A DNA stretch of 64,000 bases from Dimorphilus gyrociliatus (Eukaryota; Animalia; Annelida): positions 3,157,891 to 3,221,890 of the forward strand of contig CAJFCJ010000002.1 in assembly GCA_904063045.1 (NCBI GenBank). Reading direction: 5' to 3'. The position numbers and the translations under genes are program-made. This document shows, piece by piece, positions 1 to 11,063 of the stretch. The notes beneath the pieces are model-generated. The model was not told the origin of the DNA and did no database searches. It saw nothing but the letters and a program-made list of their open reading frames with translations. The number at the start of each line of letters is the position of its first letter. Positions within the stretch are counted from its first letter, which is position 1.

Positions 1-770
1 AGTCGCGCCATCTATAGTTAAGAGGATTGTTAATTTTTTAATGTTCAAAGCTTTGGGCATCAGTCTTGACTACTAATGGCTCCAATCCTCAGAGATCTTT
101 AATTCCACAGGGTGATTACAAGGCTAAATCAATGATAGTCAATTCAAATTGAGGAACTAAATAGGTTCGAGTAGTTGTTACATTCACTGTATTTTTTTTT
201 TCGATTAATCCATGCTCCTTTTGATGAAGTATAAAATGTAGTGAATTTCATGAATTGAGTAGGATTAGTCTTTTTTTTTTCAGGTATTATATTTCCAACT
301 GTAAATAAAGTTAACTTCACAGAGATTTAATTGGATCAATAGATTTTTTTTTTCTAGCGTTTGCTAGAGGTTTTGAAATAAAAATTTCATTTGCAATTCG
401 GTTGGATAATCAAACTGTAGAACTTTTTAAATTGAAAATGTAACAAACAAACTTTAACCATTGTAAACAAATATAGAAAAAGTTGATTATTTTTCTTTAA
501 TGGATTTGTATTAAATAAATACGACGCAAGCAACAGTAAATAATATCTCATTGTATACTACAATATACATATAACATGTCATGTATAAACATTCAAGTAT
601 ACATGGGGTACGTACGTATAGTTTGGTGTGTAAAATTTATATGTATAACGTAGTTACGTACATAAATACATATACTGTATATACTAATATATAGACGGGT
701 AATAAATTACAAAAATAGCAGCTCAAACAAAAAGAAATCTAACGTGACAAAGGACATAGTCAGGAGGCTA

Positions 771-2041
771 TCAGGATTCCAACGACGGAGTAAACATGTG
801 GTGAAAACATAAATCGGAATGCCTTGACTTTCTATGACAAAATGCAAACTTTACACCTGTCGGGGTCCGGAAATGACCTACTAATTGTTCATTGAAGATA
901 TTCCTTGGAAAAGTGTATAGTTGAATATCATCTATATATTTGTCATTATCGTCGATTCCGTTATAGGAGGCTGGCGGTTGAGCAACTATTGTGGTCAAAT
1001 AATTAGTTTCGAATGAGCACAGTATGTAGTGAGGAAAATAGTGAAAATCCGTAAGGAAAGATGATGGAAAATTTCTACGTTTCTTATTCCTGCTAATGTC
1101 GCCAACTAGTTTGCCATTTTTTACGTCCAGTACCCTTATAATACCCCGAGAACCAGACAAGAATACCTTATCATTAGCGACTTTCATTTCCTTAATATCT
1201 CCAATATCGTCCAAGTCGAAACGATATGTCCATTTAAATTGAAAAGCTCCGTCTAACATCTCTACAATATTATACTCCGAAGCATATCTCGTTATAATCA
1301 CTTCCTTAGAAGTAACATCCATATCGTGTAAACGCTCTTTGTCGTTTTTACAACGATAATAAATCATTCTACTGAAATCTTTAATTTTGTAAATCTCAAA
1401 ACCATTAACTTCTATGATATACAATGTATCGCCAGTCACCTTCATATCGTAGTTTTGCTCCAAATCGCATTTCCATTTTACAATCACACGTGGCTTTTTA
1501 AGACCGTCCATATCGTATTCTGTTATTTTATATAAATAATAGTCGGATAATACGTCCTCTTCCAAAACGTATATTTTCTCCTCCGTCAGAGCGACTGATT
1601 GATAATTTTCATTTAGACAGAAACTCTCATCCAATTTAGCGTCTTTCTCAATCAATCGATAAAATTTCAAATTTTCGTAACAATAATCAATACAAAACGA
1701 ACGGCTTAGAGAAGCGTCTATGGAGTTTGTCAACTTTTGCCACATATCTTTAACGTTTGAGCCAAAAGCATCGCCAATAGTAGTTTCGAAACTTTCCAAT
1801 AATTTAATATGCTGTAACAATTCGGCAAGTTGACTTTCCTTTTCATCGTAAAAAGTAATTATTCTATCTTCTAAAAAGTCCTTTTGTTTTTGAATGAATT
1901 CAATAGCCTTTTCAATATCAATATTAACATCGCTTCTTGTTCTTTGCTTTTCTTCAAACACTTTTTCAATACCTCTTAAAATAACCTTTCTTAATTCATT
2001 ACCATTTCCACCTTTAACCAACTTTTCATAATCATCTTTTG
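771..2041 (-). CDS. Terminal exon B of the RING gene, paralogous to exon A. With the RING exon it gives 522 aa.
   Basis: Acceptor tttaaacag|CA at 2042|2041 is phase 1 and the frame is open (T-KDDYEKLVKGGNGNELRKVILRGIE...). The ORF-track start is a TTG inside the exon. It aligns with exon A at both ends (LEDRI..F...KESQLAELLQHI vs LEDQI..F...KENQIGELLQQI; TGVKF...F.H.F.P). No RING-coding sequence lies in 2042-2499. Confidence 0.75.
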
Positions 2042-2499
2042 CTGTTTAAATAAGGATTCAATATTACTATACTATTGAAAAAAATTACTTATATTATTAA
2101 TGAATTAACTAATTAAAATATCAAAGAAATACGTGTGTATGTGTATATATATTAATATATATAATTATATATATATACATGTTTGTTTGTGTGTGTGTAA
2201 TATCTCAATATAACATGTACAGAACTAGATACAAAAAGAAGTTTTTGGTTGTTGTTGTTGTTTTTAAAATTTATACTTGTTTCCCTTCTTAATATAAAAA
2301 CAAAATAGTTAAATTATTAGAAACTCTAAAAATAAACCAAAATTAAAATAAAAAATATATAAAAAAGAAAACAAATGAAGGAGAAAAGAAACGAAAAAAA
2401 TGATGTGAATTAATTTACATAATGTTTTTTTGTTGCTTTCACTACCTAATACATATATATAGGCGTATGTGTGTGCTTTTTTATCCTTTTTTTGTCATT

Positions 2500-3752
2500 T
2501 TAAACTGATATTGGGTTAAACGTATGACGAAAGACGATTTTTAAAGTATTTGAGGCGTGTTGTTGTCCAATTAGAAATTTTACTCCAGTCTGAGTTAAAA
2601 AGTATCCCAAGACAGTTCCTTTTGTAAAAATTCTCTCAAATGTTAATATATGAAAGTCTTCATTTTTTTCTGCCGTTTTTATAATTCTTGCTAAAACGAT
2701 AATGCTATCTTTTTCGAATAGTGCACAATCAATTGTTAACTTTAAAGAATCGAGATTTGATAGTTCCGATAATGGACGCCTGACTTCGGTATGAGATAAT
2801 TGAATTTCTTGAAACTTGTTACCATTCTCCATTAGTACTATGTAAACTGTTTTATTAGAACCAAGTATGAACAGTAGTTCTCTTGATACTTGCATCTGCT
2901 CTACAGTTTCCATTTTATCATCCATGGTTGCTACCCAATCAACACCTAATGGATCTGATATTTTAACAATGTCATTTTGATTATCCTTTTTACCGTTACA
3001 GATAATTCCAGATTTAAATGATACTATTCTTTTACATTCGTAGCCGTTTTTCACTTCGAAAAATATCTCCAGCTGTTTATTAGCTTTTTTCACTTTCAGA
3101 CATTTTACACCGTTGATTTTCATTACGTAAACAGCTCTACCAACAGCAGCCATTTGATAATCGGCCCTTTCACCTTTCCATTCGGCAATATCAGCTGGTT
3201 CATTTTGTAATCTTATTCCATACTCTCTTATCTTGTAAAAATAATCTTCCATTTTCTTCTCTTCCATCAAAACATATAAAGATTTACTTGTACAAGTTAA
3301 TGTTTGATATTCCCTTGGTATATAGAAACTTCCAACTGGTTTATCTTCTACAGTAGAAAAGTTACCAAATTGAAATTTGTCAGTGTTCATAAAACTTCTG
3401 AAAAAGCAATCATATCCTAAAGACGAATCTATAAGATTCTTCAATTTTACTCTAATCTCATCAGTTTCGCTTTGAAAATCATCACCAACTCCCGATTCGA
3501 ATGAATCAAGCATTCTAATCTGTTGTAAAAGTTCACCTATTTGATTTTCCTTGTGCGAGAAAAATGATCTAATTTGATCTTCCAATAGGATCTTGTGCTT
3601 TTTAATAAGTAATAATAATTTTGATTCTTCGTCATTAATTGATTCAATAAGATTCTCCTTGTTACAAGCTATCCTCTCTAAGCCTTTTAAAACAATCTCC
3701 TCCATATTTTTTCCATTTTCTCCTTGAGGTAGTAATAGACTATAGCCGTCCG
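2500..3752 (-). CDS. Terminal exon A of the RING gene: coiled-coil plus beta-strand repeat (putative beta-propeller). With the RING exon it gives 516 aa.
   Basis: Acceptor tttag|CG at 3753|3752 is phase 1 and the frame is open to the stop at 2500 (T-DGYSLLLPQGENGKNMEEIVLKGLE...). 298+1253 nt = 517 codons. Helical N-terminal part, then repeated short hydrophobic strands such as QMQVSRELLFILGSNKTVYIVL. Confidence 0.8.
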
Positions 3753-4070
3753 CTAAATTATATAATTCTTGAATTAAATCTCTTTTTGGTTTTTTTTTGT
3801 GTCAAATTTCTTTCGTACAAACGTTTAACTAGGTTTGTCAAATAGATAAGAATTATATGGATAATAGGAAATATAATCGTGTTAAACATTTTAACTATAT
3901 AAAGTATTCTTTTTTATCAACTTTTGACTCGGTTAATGGCCAATGAGTTAACGTTGTTACTCAACTACAGTTATAAAAGACTAATTAGTTCATTTGTTAA
4001 GAATGTATATATATTCTTTTATCTTATTTAGACAATAGTCTAGCTCTTTCTCTTAAAAATGTACACTTAC

Positions 4071-4368
4071 TTGATATTTCTTCTTCACAAGTCTCAATAT
4101 CTTGAAATATTGGTAAACGGCTAAATCCGTTTACTCCATTTTCAGGCCAAATATGTGCTTTTCGACAAACTGGACAATGAAATTCGTCCCCAGTTTTTAA
4201 TTTATTCTTTTTGGAGAAAAGAACAAGGCAGTCAGCGCAGAAAATATGCGCCACTTGACATGGTAAACAATGTGGACTTCTCTCAATCCAAGAATATGAA
4301 CATATAGCGCAATTGGAACCTTTTCTGGATATAGTTGTCTTTGAAGTCTCCATGACGACTTTTCTCAT
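4071..4368 (-). CDS. First coding exon of a TRIM-like RING E3 ligase (C3HC4 RING), shared by two alternative terminal exons
   Basis: The ORF encodes CAIC...LPCQVAHIFCADC...CPVC followed by WPENGVNGF, resembling the post-RING motif of TRIM proteins. ATG at 4368 has an in-frame TGA just upstream. A consensus donor A|GTAAGT at 4071|4070 is phase 1, so the ORF-track tail to 4024 is intron. Confidence 0.85.
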
Positions 4369-5998: not shown

Positions 5999-8538
5999 CT
6001 AACTACCATTTTGACCTTGGTCCTCTTCAGTTTTTATTTTACGGAGATGATTGTACACATTTGATTTTTTGTGCTCTTTTAGGTAATCGTGCCCAAATTC
6101 TTCGTACATCTTGCTATCAATTTTGGCAGAATTAAAATCTTCAGAACGACCCCATTTGCAGGCACCTTTGAAAGCAGATAAAGACGGTTCATTCGCAATA
6201 TACACTTTGAACTCTGTTCCACTCGGTAATTCTCGACGAATATCTACTTCTAAGCGCTCTTTAAGACCTAGTATACTACCACATCCTCCAGTAACATATA
6301 TACACTTTGCTACTCTTTCCATTTGTTCTTTGGCAAGCAGCTTTCGCATTATATACGAAATAGTATCACTAATGCCGGATTGATCTACCCCCAAGATAGC
6401 AGCAGGTTGAAAGAGAACCTCTGTTGATCTGATTTGCTGAGTGGCAACATGAATTCTATAGTATTCAGCGACATCAGTTTGAGTTGGGCTATTAGATCTA
6501 TTGAACAAACATTAAAGAAATTTATGTGAAATTATTTTAATCGAACCTTGAGTAATCAGGATCATATTCTCTTAGGTGATTATCTATCTCGTCTAACTTA
6601 GTTTGCTCCTCTTCAGAATCGCTGTGACCAGTGTCCTTATTCTAAGATATAAAAATGAATCGCGTTAATTAATAATTAGTTTTTTATTTTAATTTTAGAG
6701 CTTACAATTTCCTTATAAACGTCCCAATCATCATCCCTTTGTCCGAAAGTATCTGCTTTCTTACCTTGGCCTGCAGCCAGTTCACTAAGAATTCTCATTC
6801 TTTGCTGTGAGGCATGAGTTCTTCTTTTAGCACTCTCTATTCGATGCTGTCTTCTCTTCTCTCTTCTTTCAATAAGCTCTGTCTTTTGTTTCTTCAAATC
6901 CTTTACATAACTTTCTACTTCATCTTCAGGTATTAAATTCTTTTTTGAAGTTTGTGAGACAGCTGGAGCTGGCTTAACGCCATTTTCAACTTCTTCTAAT
7001 TTAGATCTTACAGAATTTATGGAATTGTTCAACTTATTTATTTCATGACCCAATTCAGCTCTGGATGCCAATCCTAGGTCATGTAAGCTTTTCAAAAATA
7101 TATCTTCGTCTTCTTCGTCAAGTTCTTGAATAGTAATAAGTTTATTTAATTTTTGTACATCTTCCTCGAGTTTTGCTCTTCTCCTTTTGACATTCATTTG
7201 TCTCAAACGCTCTGCTTGTACTTCCTTTTTCTTTCTAGCTTCTTCCACATTAATAGCACTTTGAGCATGGGCAGTAAAAGGCAACTGATACTTGGCAACA
7301 ACTGATTCATAATAATCCGGATCATTCCACTTAATAATTTCTTCGTTATAGCATTCTACAAATTTAGCGTGTTTTCTAACTAAATATTCTGCGCGACTTA
7401 AACTCATAGATGTTGCGAGAGGTGGGTGAGCTAATTGGAGTAATCGTAACATTACATAATCCACGTGAGCTCCACCTACATTTATCCTTCTAACGCTATT
7501 GAGCAGCATTTTGCCATCCAGTATTGGAATAACGTGACAGCAATTATATCCAATAGATACAACCAAAGCATCTTCCACCATGCTCTGTTCATGAAAGAAA
7601 CTATACAAAGCATCTATACCGTACGATACACTAGGAACATTATAACATTCGAAAAGGAGTTCATTCATCTGTTGACGACAGTAATTCGGATTGCAAATAG
7701 TTTCTGTCATTACAATAGGGTGGGTAACACTTGATGACGTGATAGAGAGTCGTTCAAATATATGATCGAGTATTTCCTCCTCAAAATCGTACTGGGTCAC
7801 AATATCTCTATCGAAAGGTGTTCTCAATTGCCATCTAACCAACTCCACATTTGGTATATCATTACCAACAATGTCCTATGAGAAAGATAGCATTTTATAT
7901 GATATTAAATAGAAATCAAACTGGTGATAGATGTACTTTCGATATTGACTTTTAGACTACTATAAAAAAGTAAAGCATAAAAAAACACAATTTAATAAAA
8001 AAAAAAACTAAATTTTGCTGTAATATCCTAATATCAAATTATCAGAGAAATAAAAGAAGCTAGTTGAAGGGATTTCTCATGTATTTAATTCTAATTTGTC
8101 TTGAAACGGGAATTATTTACGAAATTTTTTCAAGGTAAAATTTAGCATTATCTGTAGCATTATTTGCATGCGAACGAATCAATTGAACTGTCACGCTCTG
8201 TTTCACTAAATTGACTAAACAAAAGGCGATGTTAAATAGTCTTATTTAGAAGAAAGAATGATTAGTTATATAAAGTTGTATAATACATACGGGTTTGCCT
8301 TTCTGTCTACATATTACACTTTTAAAAACCATGTGTGGCTCGTCGTCATGAGCGTAACCTGCCCTGCATTTGAATGTACCTGCAATTGGAAAAAAATTTC
8401 ATTTCTCAGAATAGAAAAATTTACTTTATAAGTTAGTTTTTTACCATTGTCAATTACGATGGGAATATGATTTCCAGGCCTATTCTTATAAACTGGATCC
8501 GGAATAGATTTTTCATCATCAAAAGTACATATAGACAT
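5999..8538 (-). CDS. ACTR5: Actin-related protein 5 (INO80 complex), 5 exons, about 648 aa: 8445-8538, 8291-8379, 6706-7875, 6547-6641, 5999-6497
   Basis: Actin-fold motifs PIVIDNG|TFKCRAG, LRTPFDRD, HPIVMTE..CNP.Y.RQ.M.ELLFECY, GIDALYSF and the ARP5-type charged insert. All junctions are GT-AG with consistent phases (1,0,0,2), and the 1947 nt total is divisible by 3. Confidence 0.95.
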
Positions 8539-11063
8539 TCCAGATCGGATAGAAAAATTCTTTATAGACTCATCAGTTTAACAATATAGAACAAAGCAGA
8601 CAGAGATCAAGAGCGATAATAGAAATCAAGAAATATACATCAAAATGTTAGGTGATCGTCTTTACATTTACAAGACTGATAAAAGCTGTGGAACTGGTGC
8701 CTGTTTAAAATTACAAGCAATCACCGCCTTACTAACAAATGGACGGAAAATTTCTGGCCAATCAGTGCAGCTGTAAGACACGCCATCACTCCTAACTTCT
8801 TGCGAGATTTTAAATGTAAATATTGGGAGTTTGAAGATTTTTGCTGCCTCAGGGACAAGGAACAAAAGTGTAAGTTATTTTTTCCATATACTTAATATAT
8901 AATTTTTATTCTGAGCATGTTTTTGCAATGGTAAGCAAATACTAAGCTGTTATGCAAACATGCTAAATTGATCATTGAAGACCTATCAAATATTAGCTAC
9001 CGGTCACAAGGGATTATATTAAATAGTTTTCACTTAGATTTTCCCAAGGTTCGTTGATTTATGAATGCATCATCCTCTTATCAAATAATCATAGGCCCTC
9101 ACATCCGTTTGCAAACCAATAAATTATTGTAAAAACGTCTAGTATTGAAATCACCGTTTTTTTACGCGGTTTTACATTTGTAAAATGACCCCGACTACCG
9201 TCTAAGGGCCTATTGTTAACGTCCAAATTCGCTGGACCCTTGAATAGGTGTCATCACATTCAGTTGAAGTTTGCCGGTTGAAAGGAACGTAGTTAGGAGG
9301 AGTCTTTGATAGTCTAAATTTTCGGCTAAACATTAAATGAGGTATTGAGCGATTTTTTTTCTAATTCTTTTTTTCATTTCATCTGATCTGTCAATATCCT
9401 AGTTACTGATAGCACTTTGATGTTTCGAGTGGGGCATTAAGCGTACAATTTGTTTTGAACTCTATTGCGGCGAGTGCCTCAAAATTTGAAAACCGCCAAA
9501 TTTGTTTTAGCTATTTACGATTCGCTGTAAAACGCTATTGTTTAAATATACTGAACGTTTCAGATAATTTACATTTCTTTTGAATAATACCGTTAAGATA
9601 AAAAAATATATTTATCACGTGTTCATGAAATATAAGCAATAAAAAGAGTGGCTTTACTGTTAAAACTACCGGTTAAAGTAAAACTTGATCTTATTTATAT
9701 TAATTCAAAAATATCGGTTATACTGTGTAAATTATTTAAACTGAAAAGAAATTCCTGTTCGATAGAAGTCATTCAACATAAGTAAATGGGTATTATTAGA
9801 TCTTTTTTTAGCAATAAATGAAATAGATAACATAAAATAGTACTACCTATTTTACTTTATTGTATAGAATGTGAAATTCACTATCACTTTCTTTCTATAT
9901 TTGAAATAAGGAAATTTAAACTTTCTTTGGATAATAGCTATCAAAATATCTCAAGGTGGTATTCGGGCGCTCGCTCTTTCATTTCTTCTTCCTTCCGCTT
10001 GAAGTAAACATTTTATTCATCATCGGGTCAATTCACTATCATTCCTTTTATATAAACGTTCAGATCTTTTAATTTGACACCCCATTCCTCAATCACTTAA
10101 TAACCACCATTGTAAACGATTTATAACAGTCGATATAATTTAAAATACGGTCGGGTGAATATGTGTAATTTTAGGGAGTATTTCCTCACGTTATTACTGA
10201 CGCCGCTGGATGTCCTTTCGGTGTTTAACCTTCTATTATACCTCTCGCTGCGTTCCAGCAAGATTTTCAATATATGAAAGGAAAATCAATACTTTAGGGG
10301 AAAGTTTACAGAAATAGTGAAAGATGGGATTTAACATAGTTGTCCGTGTTCATAGAAAGAGATTTGTTTGGCTATAATTCTTATTCAGTAATTGTATAAA
10401 CATAGACATCACGGCCGAATTGCAAAGGCGTCTAAAATTAGGTAATCAATTGTGGCATAAGGTTTATTCTTTGTTAATGGCAGGTAGAAATAAGCCTATT
10501 AACTAATATTTGTCAAGGGTAAAGTAATCATTGTCAGTTGATAAGCGTCCATTGAGAGTCTGTTATTTTTTCGGACGCCACATCTGCGTCTGGCCGGCAG
10601 CTGGGTATTTAAAATAGTCACTGGTAGGCCTTTAATTCTGTTACGTAATAGAAAAGACGTTTATTGAGTCTTACGTTTCATCTCACATTGAACCTTAGAG
10701 GGGAGCATAAAAAGAGGTTGGCGACGCAACAAGCACACGAAAAAGAGTTGATTTAACGACGGGATGCCACTGTTATCGGTGGTATTGTAAAGAACAACAC
10801 TATTTAGAGTGATTAATTCTTAACAACTTGCCGACCAATTAACGAGTAATATAGAAGTCGTCGGCACCTTTGGCACATGGAGTGTGCACGATAATTTGAA
10901 TTCACTTCCTGTAATTTTATCGCCGGCTTTTACAACGTGCGAAATTTTTTCTCCATTTGATGTCTTGTCAGCTTTTTTATATATCTTATGTAAAAAGAGA
11001 AAACCGACGCCTAAACGTTAATTTCTTGTTTTTTTTGCTTGCAGATTCGTTAAGGTAGACACA

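What the first reader, a model, noticed from the sequence alone, without database searches (positions are those of the whole stretch)
771..4368. One RING exon, two interchangeable substrate-binding exons: a modular TRIM-like E3 ligase
Seen in sequence: a single RING exon ends at a consensus phase-1 donor (4071|GTAAGT). Downstream lie two tandem, intronless ~1.25-kb exons (2500-3752 and 771-2041). Each starts with a phase-1 AG acceptor and is open in frame with the RING exon (516 and 522 aa). They are clearly paralogous from the coiled-coil start to the C-terminal TGVKF motif, yet highly diverged in the middle. The 458 nt between them is AT-rich and has no RING or plausible first exon. Established: RING-coiled-coil-propeller is the TRIM/NHL-type layout, where the C-terminal domain selects substrates. 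Inference: alternative last-exon choice lets one catalytic RING swap between divergent recognition modules, a constant-plus-variable design like clustered protocadherins or UGT1A but with the variable part at the 3' end, possibly for innate-immune or quality-control diversification. More variable exons could lie left of the window.
Basis: partly seen in the sequence, partly recalled or inferred. Interest (0 to 1): 0.8.

Follow-up and report, generated by a model that had tools for sequence, protein, structure and literature searches.

The report
One RING exon, two propeller cassettes
A small marine worm has a ubiquitin-ligase gene with one catalytic RING exon followed by two old, diverged coiled-coil/propeller exons; the second can only be translated if spliced to an upstream coding exon, so the gene most likely makes two ligases with different target-binding ends, though no RNA data could be obtained to prove it.

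Summary
The RING exon is 4368-4071 and ends at a phase-1 GTAAGT donor. Exon A is 3752-2500 and exon B is 2041-771. Both open at phase-1 AG acceptors, and A and B are 28% identical (E 3e-48).

An independently assembled relative has the same Arp - RING - A - B order, with the donor and both acceptors at identical positions and phase. All three exons are under strong purifying selection (omega 0.04-0.12, dS saturated).

B has no in-frame ATG before codon 99 in either species, yet codons 1-98 evolve as coding sequence (pS 0.43 vs pN 0.10, p 2e-7). The 458-nt A-B spacer of the window cannot encode any ATG-started exon with a phase-1 donor, and it holds no RING relic. Splicing from the RING exon is therefore the only in-frame route found for B.

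AlphaFold models give a ~100-residue helix plus a six-bladed, NHL-like propeller for both cassettes. No B-box is present.

There are no further cassettes to the left of the window. The low omega argues against arms-race diversification.

Earlier notes of this scan describe other TRIM-like families in this genome, but not this arrangement.

Verdict: a real, conserved locus; a new variant of constant-5'/variable-3' gene design; isoform use is inferred.

The parts
4071..4368 (-). Constant exon: start codon plus RING finger (99 codons + 1 base), ending in phase 1
   Evidence: Pfam zf-RING_2 E 9e-5. 74% aa identity to the relative, omega 0.07.
4065..4070 (-). 5' splice site GTAAGT, the only strong donor in the locus
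   Evidence: It is identical and in the same phase in the relative. There is no GTRAG inside the RING exon or exon A in either species.
3753..4070 (-). Intron from the RING exon to A (318 nt). Its last ~20 nt (3753-3772) are conserved between the two species.
2500..3752 (-). Cassette A: phase-1 acceptor, ~100-residue helix, six-bladed propeller, own stop codon
   Evidence: omega 0.06-0.12; pLDDT 83.
2042..2499 (-). A-B spacer (GC 0.20). It holds no possible in-frame first exon, no RING relic, no AATAAA/ATTAAA, and is not conserved with the relative.
771..2041 (-). Cassette B: phase-1 acceptor, the same helix + propeller layout, own stop codon. The first in-frame Met is codon 99. An in-frame TAA lies two codons upstream of the acceptor.
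   Evidence: omega 0.04-0.09; pLDDT 74.
284..339 (.). 56-nt block, 87.5% identical to the relative, about 440 nt beyond B's stop. It carries ATTAAA on the gene's strand and AATAAA on the other strand. It may be a 3'-end element of this gene, of the convergent neighbour, or of both.
   Evidence: The attribution was not resolved.

Best explanation
This is one transcription unit of a lineage-restricted RING / coiled-coil / six-bladed-propeller ubiquitin-ligase family. The single 5' exon supplies the start codon and the RING, which is the E2-recruiting catalytic part. Its phase-1 donor is joined either to cassette A or, skipping A, to cassette B. Each cassette carries its own long helix (presumably the dimerising coiled coil), its own propeller (presumably the target-binding part) and its own stop codon. 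The gene would thus give two ligases of 516 and 522 residues with the same RING and different recognition and dimerisation modules.

Shown:
- The exon anatomy, the phases and the paralogy.
- Conservation of the layout and of all three coding parts in a second species.
- B's N-terminus is translated but has no start codon of its own.
- The fold of both cassettes.

Inferred:
- That the RING exon is the exon joined to B.
- That A and B are used as alternatives.
- That the propellers select targets.

A and B arose by tandem duplication before the two species split. Duplicates elsewhere in the subfamily kept a first exon of their own; B has none.
For: - The donor and both acceptors are phase 1 and in frame.
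- A relative assembled independently from three runs has Arp - RING - A - B. It has GTAAGT at the same codon position and both AG acceptors at the same position and phase. This rules out an assembly error.
- Omega is 0.07 for the RING, 0.06-0.12 for A and 0.04-0.09 for B, with dS >1.6.
- The first in-frame Met of B is codon 99 in both species. Codons 1-98 have pS 0.433 vs pN 0.103, Fisher p 1.7e-7. The chance of 98 codons staying open is about 2e-4. Seven out-of-frame ATGs precede the first in-frame one.
- In the window there is no ATG-started frame ending at a GT/GC donor in phase 1, either in the spacer or starting in the last 400 nt of A.
- The spacer has no RING relic.
- There is no other strong donor.
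- The nucleotide similarity between the species starts at the B acceptor itself.
- A and B are sister clades, each with its ortholog, at aLRT 99-100.
- The window's spacer lacks AATAAA/ATTAAA, which fits frequent read-through beyond A.
Against:
- Splicing from the RING exon to B would remove 2,029 nt in a genome whose median intron is 66 bp and whose splicing favours short introns (PMC7854359).
- RING-less, body-only genes with their own ATG are common in this family: about 17 of 21 in one cluster. A RING is therefore not obligatory for a body.
- The relative's spacer does allow one short ATG exon with weak phase-1 donors.
- Absence of candidates in a 458-nt spacer is expected by chance in 21% of shuffles.
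Confidence: 0.7

Rival explanations
1. B is an independent, RING-less gene with its own promoter in the spacer. It would be translated from a non-AUG codon, from Met99, or from an unrecognised tiny first exon.
For: - Body-only family members with their own ATG are frequent.
- The C15 paralog body2 has its own degenerate first exon, which the RING search missed.
- The relative's spacer allows a 14-19-codon ATG exon.
Against: - The window's spacer allows no such exon.
- Codons 1-98 are constrained as protein, so a start at Met99 does not explain them.
- Seven out-of-frame ATGs come first.
- An in-frame TAA lies two codons upstream of the acceptor.
- The spacer is not conserved.
Confidence: 0.15
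2. B is transcribed on its own and joined to the RING exon by trans-splicing of two pre-mRNAs, as in Drosophila mod(mdg4). The protein product is the same as in the main explanation but the RNA route differs.
For: - A precedent exists for constant exons plus independently transcribed 3' variable exons (PMC13490949).
- The long distance would matter less.
Against: - A and B lie on the same strand and in order, so cis-splicing suffices.
- There is no evidence for a promoter in the spacer.
- This kind of trans-splicing is not known in annelids (own knowledge).
Confidence: 0.05
3. B is an orphaned partial duplicate. It is either untranslated sequence behind A, or the apparent arrangement is an assembly artefact that lost a second RING exon.
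For: B has no start codon and no RING of its own.
Against: - B is the best conserved of the three parts: 75% aa identity, omega 0.04-0.09, and open for 422 codons in both species.
- The same layout occurs in three independent contigs of the relative.
Confidence: 0.03

Closest known systems
TRIM5 / TRIM5-CypA (TRIMCyp) of macaques and owl monkeys
   Same: A RING-containing N-terminal part is joined by alternative splicing either to its usual C-terminal recognition domain or to a second recognition domain encoded by a downstream exon (PMC2279257).
   Different: - In TRIM5-CypA the second module is an unrelated, retrotransposed cyclophilin, and the coiled coil stays constant.
- Here the two modules are old paralogs, and each brings its own coiled coil.
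- Here no B-box and no SPRY domain are present.
- Here the splicing is not yet shown.
Drosophila mod(mdg4) and lola (also Broad-Complex): constant BTB exons plus alternative 3' exons
   Same: A constant 5' part with one shared donor is combined with paralogous 3' terminal cassettes, each ending in its own stop (PMC13490949 abstract; lola and BR-C from own knowledge).
   Different: - Those are transcription or chromatin factors with 4 to more than 30 zinc-finger cassettes, partly joined in trans.
- Here there are two cassettes, in a RING ligase, on one strand.
TRIM-NHL proteins (Brat, NHL-2, Mei-P26, TRIM2, LIN-41)
   Same: - The order is RING, coiled coil, six-bladed propeller.
- The best structural matches of cassette A are the Brat NHL (Z 17.0, rmsd 3.9, 233 aligned), NHL-2 (Z 16.1), Mei-P26 (Z 16.0) and TRIM2 (Z 15.3) domains.
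   Different: - There is no B-box, no filamin domain and no Pfam NHL repeat match.
- Unrelated six-bladed propellers score nearly as high (Z ~15), so common descent is not shown.
Clustered protocadherins / UGT1A
   Same: One constant part is combined with one of several tandem paralogous variable exons.
   Different: In those loci the variable exons are 5', each has its own promoter, and the choice is made by promoter selection (own knowledge). Here the variable part is 3', and the choice would be made by splice-site and/or poly(A) selection.

Membership tests
TRIM / RBCC family | N-terminal RING finger | tested here: met
   Pfam zf-RING_2 E 9e-5, which is below the gathering score. The C3HC4-type ligand spacing is intact and conserved in the relative. 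There are 130 paralogous RING matches in the genome.
TRIM / RBCC family | One or two B-boxes between the RING and the coiled coil | tested here: not met
   No zf-B_box match in the RING exon, in A, in B or in four full-length paralogs. The RING exon is followed directly by the helix.
TRIM / RBCC family | Coiled coil after the zinc fingers | tested here: met
   AlphaFold places a single helix at residues 13-112 of A and 14-112 of B, with pLDDT mostly 80-93. Dimerisation was not tested.
TRIM-NHL subfamily | C-terminal NHL-repeat six-bladed propeller | tested here: inconclusive
   The fold is a six-bladed propeller with NHL domains as top matches, Z 15-17. There is no NHL Pfam match, and other propellers reach Z ~15.
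Constant-5' / alternative-3'-terminal-exon genes (TRIM5-CypA, mod(mdg4), lola type) | One shared donor whose phase fits each variable exon's acceptor; each variable exon has its own stop | tested here: met
Constant-5' / alternative-3'-terminal-exon genes (TRIM5-CypA, mod(mdg4), lola type) | mRNAs that join the constant exon to each variable exon | not testable with these tools
The joined models were not searched, by rule.
Lineage-restricted RING / coiled-coil / propeller family of this genome | Sequence homology of the RING and of the body to the family | tested here: met
   A profile of the bodies finds 63 places in the genome. It finds only 95 proteins among 1.84 billion representatives.

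The most novel reading that the evidence does not exclude
This is a RING ubiquitin ligase built as a constant catalytic exon plus two swappable cassettes. Each cassette carries both the dimerising coiled coil and the target-binding propeller. The arrangement has been kept under strong purifying selection since before two worm species diverged. It would be the first case I know of in which a RING E3 exchanges paralogous recognition-plus-dimerisation modules by terminal-exon choice, giving two ligases that self-sort.
Probability: 0.6. Interest if true: 0.6.

Novelty: new variant of a known kind. Interest (0 to 1): 0.5.

Why it matters
If both junctions are used, one promoter and one catalytic exon serve two ligases with different target-binding ends. 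That would be a compact way to widen E3 specificity in a genome noted for streamlining.

It would be a natural counterpart of TRIM5-CypA. The differences are that the modules here are paralogous and that the coiled coil is swapped together with the propeller, so the isoforms could sort into separate dimers.

It also shows how a tandem duplicate that lost its first exon can be rescued by the upstream gene's donor.

The family itself (RING / helix / six-bladed propeller, together with many RING-less bodies) is lineage-restricted, and I found no description of it in the papers I could search.

Tried and rejected
- All searches were done exon by exon, by reference.
- Word-index protein searches with A and with B each found only the relative's ORF. 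They found no transcript-derived or longer protein.
- All four contigs that hold the relative's A are colinear genomic DNA, not spliced.
- Hidden first exon or RING relic in the spacer: none.
- Donors inside A or inside the RING exon: none of GTRAG type.
- SL trans-splicing or an operon as the source of B's acceptor: rejected on PMC7854359, provided the species name is right.
- The C15 paralog cluster as a second example of a shared RING: rejected. Its downstream body has its own degenerate 4-Cys first exon, and its upstream body has its own ATG.
- Further cassettes left of the window: none.
- Pfam on the bodies gave nothing.
- Paper searches for the run accessions and for 'alternative last exon' + RING + TRIM gave nothing useful.
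- The careful tree did not finish in the time allowed. The quick IQ-TREE tree is what I report.
Full report
**1. What is in the sequence**

The minus strand of window 771-4368 holds three open pieces.

- The first piece starts at the ATG at 4368 and runs 298 nt to 4071, where GTAAGT follows. That is 99 codons plus one base, so phase 1.
- The second piece opens behind TTTAG at 3752 and ends with TAA at 2502-2500.
- The third piece opens behind AACAG at 2041 and ends with TGA at 773-771.
- In both downstream pieces the first two bases complete the split codon, and the frame then coincides with the long ORF.
- By arithmetic the products would be 516 and 522 residues.
- In the third piece an in-frame TAA lies two codons upstream of the AG, so the frame opens at the acceptor.
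- Pfam sees a weak RING in the first piece (zf-RING_2 E 9e-5, below the gathering score) and nothing in the other two.
- The two long exons align over their whole length: 28% identity, E 3e-48. Identity is about 42% in residues 41-120 and only 11-20% in residues 201-360.

**2. Genome and family context**

- The window is C2:3157891-3221890 of a 77.9-Mb assembly with about 30% GC.
- An earlier, unchecked note of this scan names the organism as the annelid Dimorphilus gyrociliatus. The size fits the published 73.8 Mb (PMC7854359). I could not verify the name myself.
- The RING exon has 130 paralogous matches in the genome. A profile of the bodies has 63.
- Most members are intronless single ORFs of about 480-540 residues with the RING and the body in one frame.
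- The same body profile finds only 95 proteins among 1.84 billion cluster representatives, so the family is lineage-restricted.
- None of the members I scanned has a B-box.
- The family also contains many RING-less bodies with their own ATG. In C5:2366-2424 kb about 17 of 21 bodies are of this kind.
- No other body or RING lies next to the locus. The suggestion of further cassettes to the left is therefore not supported.

**3. A second species**

- A Logan contig of 34.7 kb (L052), and two further contigs from other runs, carry the orthologous region. It has an actin-related gene, a 107-residue RING ORF, an A ortholog and a B ortholog in the same order and orientation.
- Between the species only the exons align at the DNA level, at 73-78%.
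- The relative's RING exon ends with GTAAGT after 95 codons plus one base.
- Its A acceptor sits in an identical 16-nt context.
- Its B acceptor (AAAG|GG) is at exactly the same distance from the conserved DDYEKLV... start of the cassette.
- This excludes an assembly error that removed a second RING exon.
- Codon-based comparison gives, for dN/dS by NG86 and ML: RING 0.070 / 0.068, A 0.124 / 0.058, B 0.094 / 0.037. dS is 1.6-3.8.
- B is the best conserved part, at 74.6% amino-acid identity.
- In a quick maximum-likelihood tree A and B are sisters (aLRT 99), and each is paired with its ortholog (aLRT 100). The stems are several times longer than the tips. The duplication is therefore much older than the species split.

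**4. Can B be translated on its own?**

- In both species the first in-frame Met of B is codon 99. In the relative the first in-frame Met of A is codon 80.
- Codons 1-98 of B nevertheless evolve as protein: Sd 23.3 over 53.8 synonymous sites, against Nd 24.7 over 240.2 non-synonymous sites, Fisher p 1.7e-7.
- The chance that 98 codons stay open at this composition is about 2e-4.
- Seven out-of-frame ATGs precede the first in-frame one.
- So the N-terminus is translated, and the reading frame must enter through the acceptor.
- I enumerated every ATG in the 458-nt spacer, and in the last 400 nt of exon A, whose open frame reaches a GT or GC in phase 1. There is none in the window.
- The relative has one ATG with three weak GT donors (14-19 codons) and two GC possibilities. 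None of these is conserved.
- Absence by chance is not rare (21% of shuffles), so this is a logical exclusion for this species, not a statistical one.
- The spacers share no similarity beyond low-complexity words. They contain no RING relic (best tblastn E 0.16-0.9).
- No GTRAG donor exists inside the RING exon or exon A in either species.
- The phase-1 donor at 4070 is thus the only strong donor in the locus, and the RING exon is the only coding exon found that can feed B.

**5. Fold**

- With a 23-row alignment of family bodies, AlphaFold2 models cassette A at mean pLDDT 83. It has one helix at residues 13-112 and an all-beta domain at 114-410.
- Cassette B is modelled at pLDDT 74 with the same layout.
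- Foldseek returns propellers only.
- The exhaustive structural search ranks the NHL domains of Brat (Z 17.0, rmsd 3.9, 233 aligned), NHL-2 (Z 16.1), Mei-P26 (Z 16.0) and TRIM2 (Z 15.3) at or near the top. Sialidases, Sec12 and YncE reach Z 15-15.6.
- The domain is a six-bladed propeller of NHL-like shape. Homology to NHL is not established.

**6. Comparison inside the subfamily**

- The closest paralog cluster (C15, L051) shares the phase-1 intron directly after the RING. There the intron is only about 55 nt.
- Its downstream body has its own first exon (L051:7334-7493). This exon has an ATG, four Cys, a GTAAGC donor in phase 1 and an acceptor at 7597|7598. It is a degenerate RING exon that the RING search missed.
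- Its upstream body has its own ATG.
- So tandem duplicates in this subfamily normally keep a first exon. B at the C2 locus is the exception, and the C15 cluster is not a second case of a shared RING.

**7. Mechanism, with its status**

- The most likely reading is that one pre-mRNA starts upstream of 4368 and its single donor is joined to the A or the B acceptor.
- Consistent hints, all of them inference:
  - The tract before the A acceptor is A-rich and poor in pyrimidines, but its last ~20 nt are conserved.
  - The B acceptor follows a T-rich tract, which is long in the relative.
  - The window's spacer has no AATAAA or ATTAAA although its GC is 0.20.
  - A conserved 56-nt block with ATTAAA lies about 440 nt beyond B's stop. 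It could equally belong to the convergent neighbour.
- Points against:
  - The RING-to-B intron would be 2,029 nt, where the median intron is 66 bp (PMC7854359).
  - RING-less bodies are viable genes in this family.
  - There are no transcript data.
- SL trans-splicing and operons are reported absent in D. gyrociliatus.

**8. What could not be done**

I followed its instruction to go on with other tools, so there are no junction reads, transcript ends or expression data.
- No place was reported as human-like.
- The joined 516- and 522-residue models were not assembled or looked up.

**9. Comparison with known systems**

- Strict TRIM membership fails on the B-box.
- TRIM-NHL resemblance is structural only.
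- The gene design resembles TRIM5 / TRIM5-CypA, where a downstream exon gives the RING-bearing N-terminal part a second recognition domain by alternative splicing (PMC2279257).
- It also resembles mod(mdg4)/lola, where constant exons are joined to one of many paralogous 3' exons (PMC13490949).
- It differs from both in two ways: the cassettes are old paralogs, and each carries its own coiled coil as well as the propeller.
- The low omega of both cassettes speaks for two stable, distinct functions and against an arms race.

**10. Verdict**

- The locus is real, conserved and functional in all three parts.
- That the RING exon serves both cassettes is the best-supported explanation, at about 0.7. 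About 0.05 more goes to the same product made in trans.
- It remains to be shown at the RNA level.
- It is a new variant of a known design. Interest is moderate, 0.5.

Noticed in passing
L051:7334-7493 (G000:C15:164333-164492): A short first exon with an ATG, four Cys (CxxC...CxxC) and a phase-1 GTAAGC donor lies in front of a family body. It looks like a degenerate RING exon, and the RING protein search missed it. The body behind it is split over two overlapping frames (7609-8355 and 8325-8870), so it is either frameshifted or contains a short intron.
   Followed up: partly
G000:C5:2366001-2426000 (L056-L061): A dense tandem cluster of about 21 family bodies. About 17 have no RING but have their own ATG a few to ~60 codons before the helix. 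Body-only genes therefore make up a large part of this family.
   Followed up: partly
window 3753-3772: The last ~20 nt of the RING-to-A intron are nearly identical in the relative, although the rest of the intron does not align. This is a possible splicing control element at a pyrimidine-poor acceptor.
   Followed up: no
window 284-339 and 6-149: Two blocks conserved with the relative (87.5% over 56 nt; 73% over 144 nt) lie downstream of B. The first carries ATTAAA on the minus strand and AATAAA on the plus strand. They may belong to the convergent RAB10-like neighbour noted earlier by the scan.
   Followed up: partly
P0003 (1204 aa) vs L035 / G000:C5:2385811-2390916: A database protein runs through three adjacent family genes (body-only, RING+body, RING+body). 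It is most likely a merged gene model in a public annotation.
   Followed up: no
window 5999-6508 (-) and L052:5232-7066: An actin-related protein gene lies upstream on the same strand as the RING gene in both species. It served as the synteny anchor.
   Followed up: no
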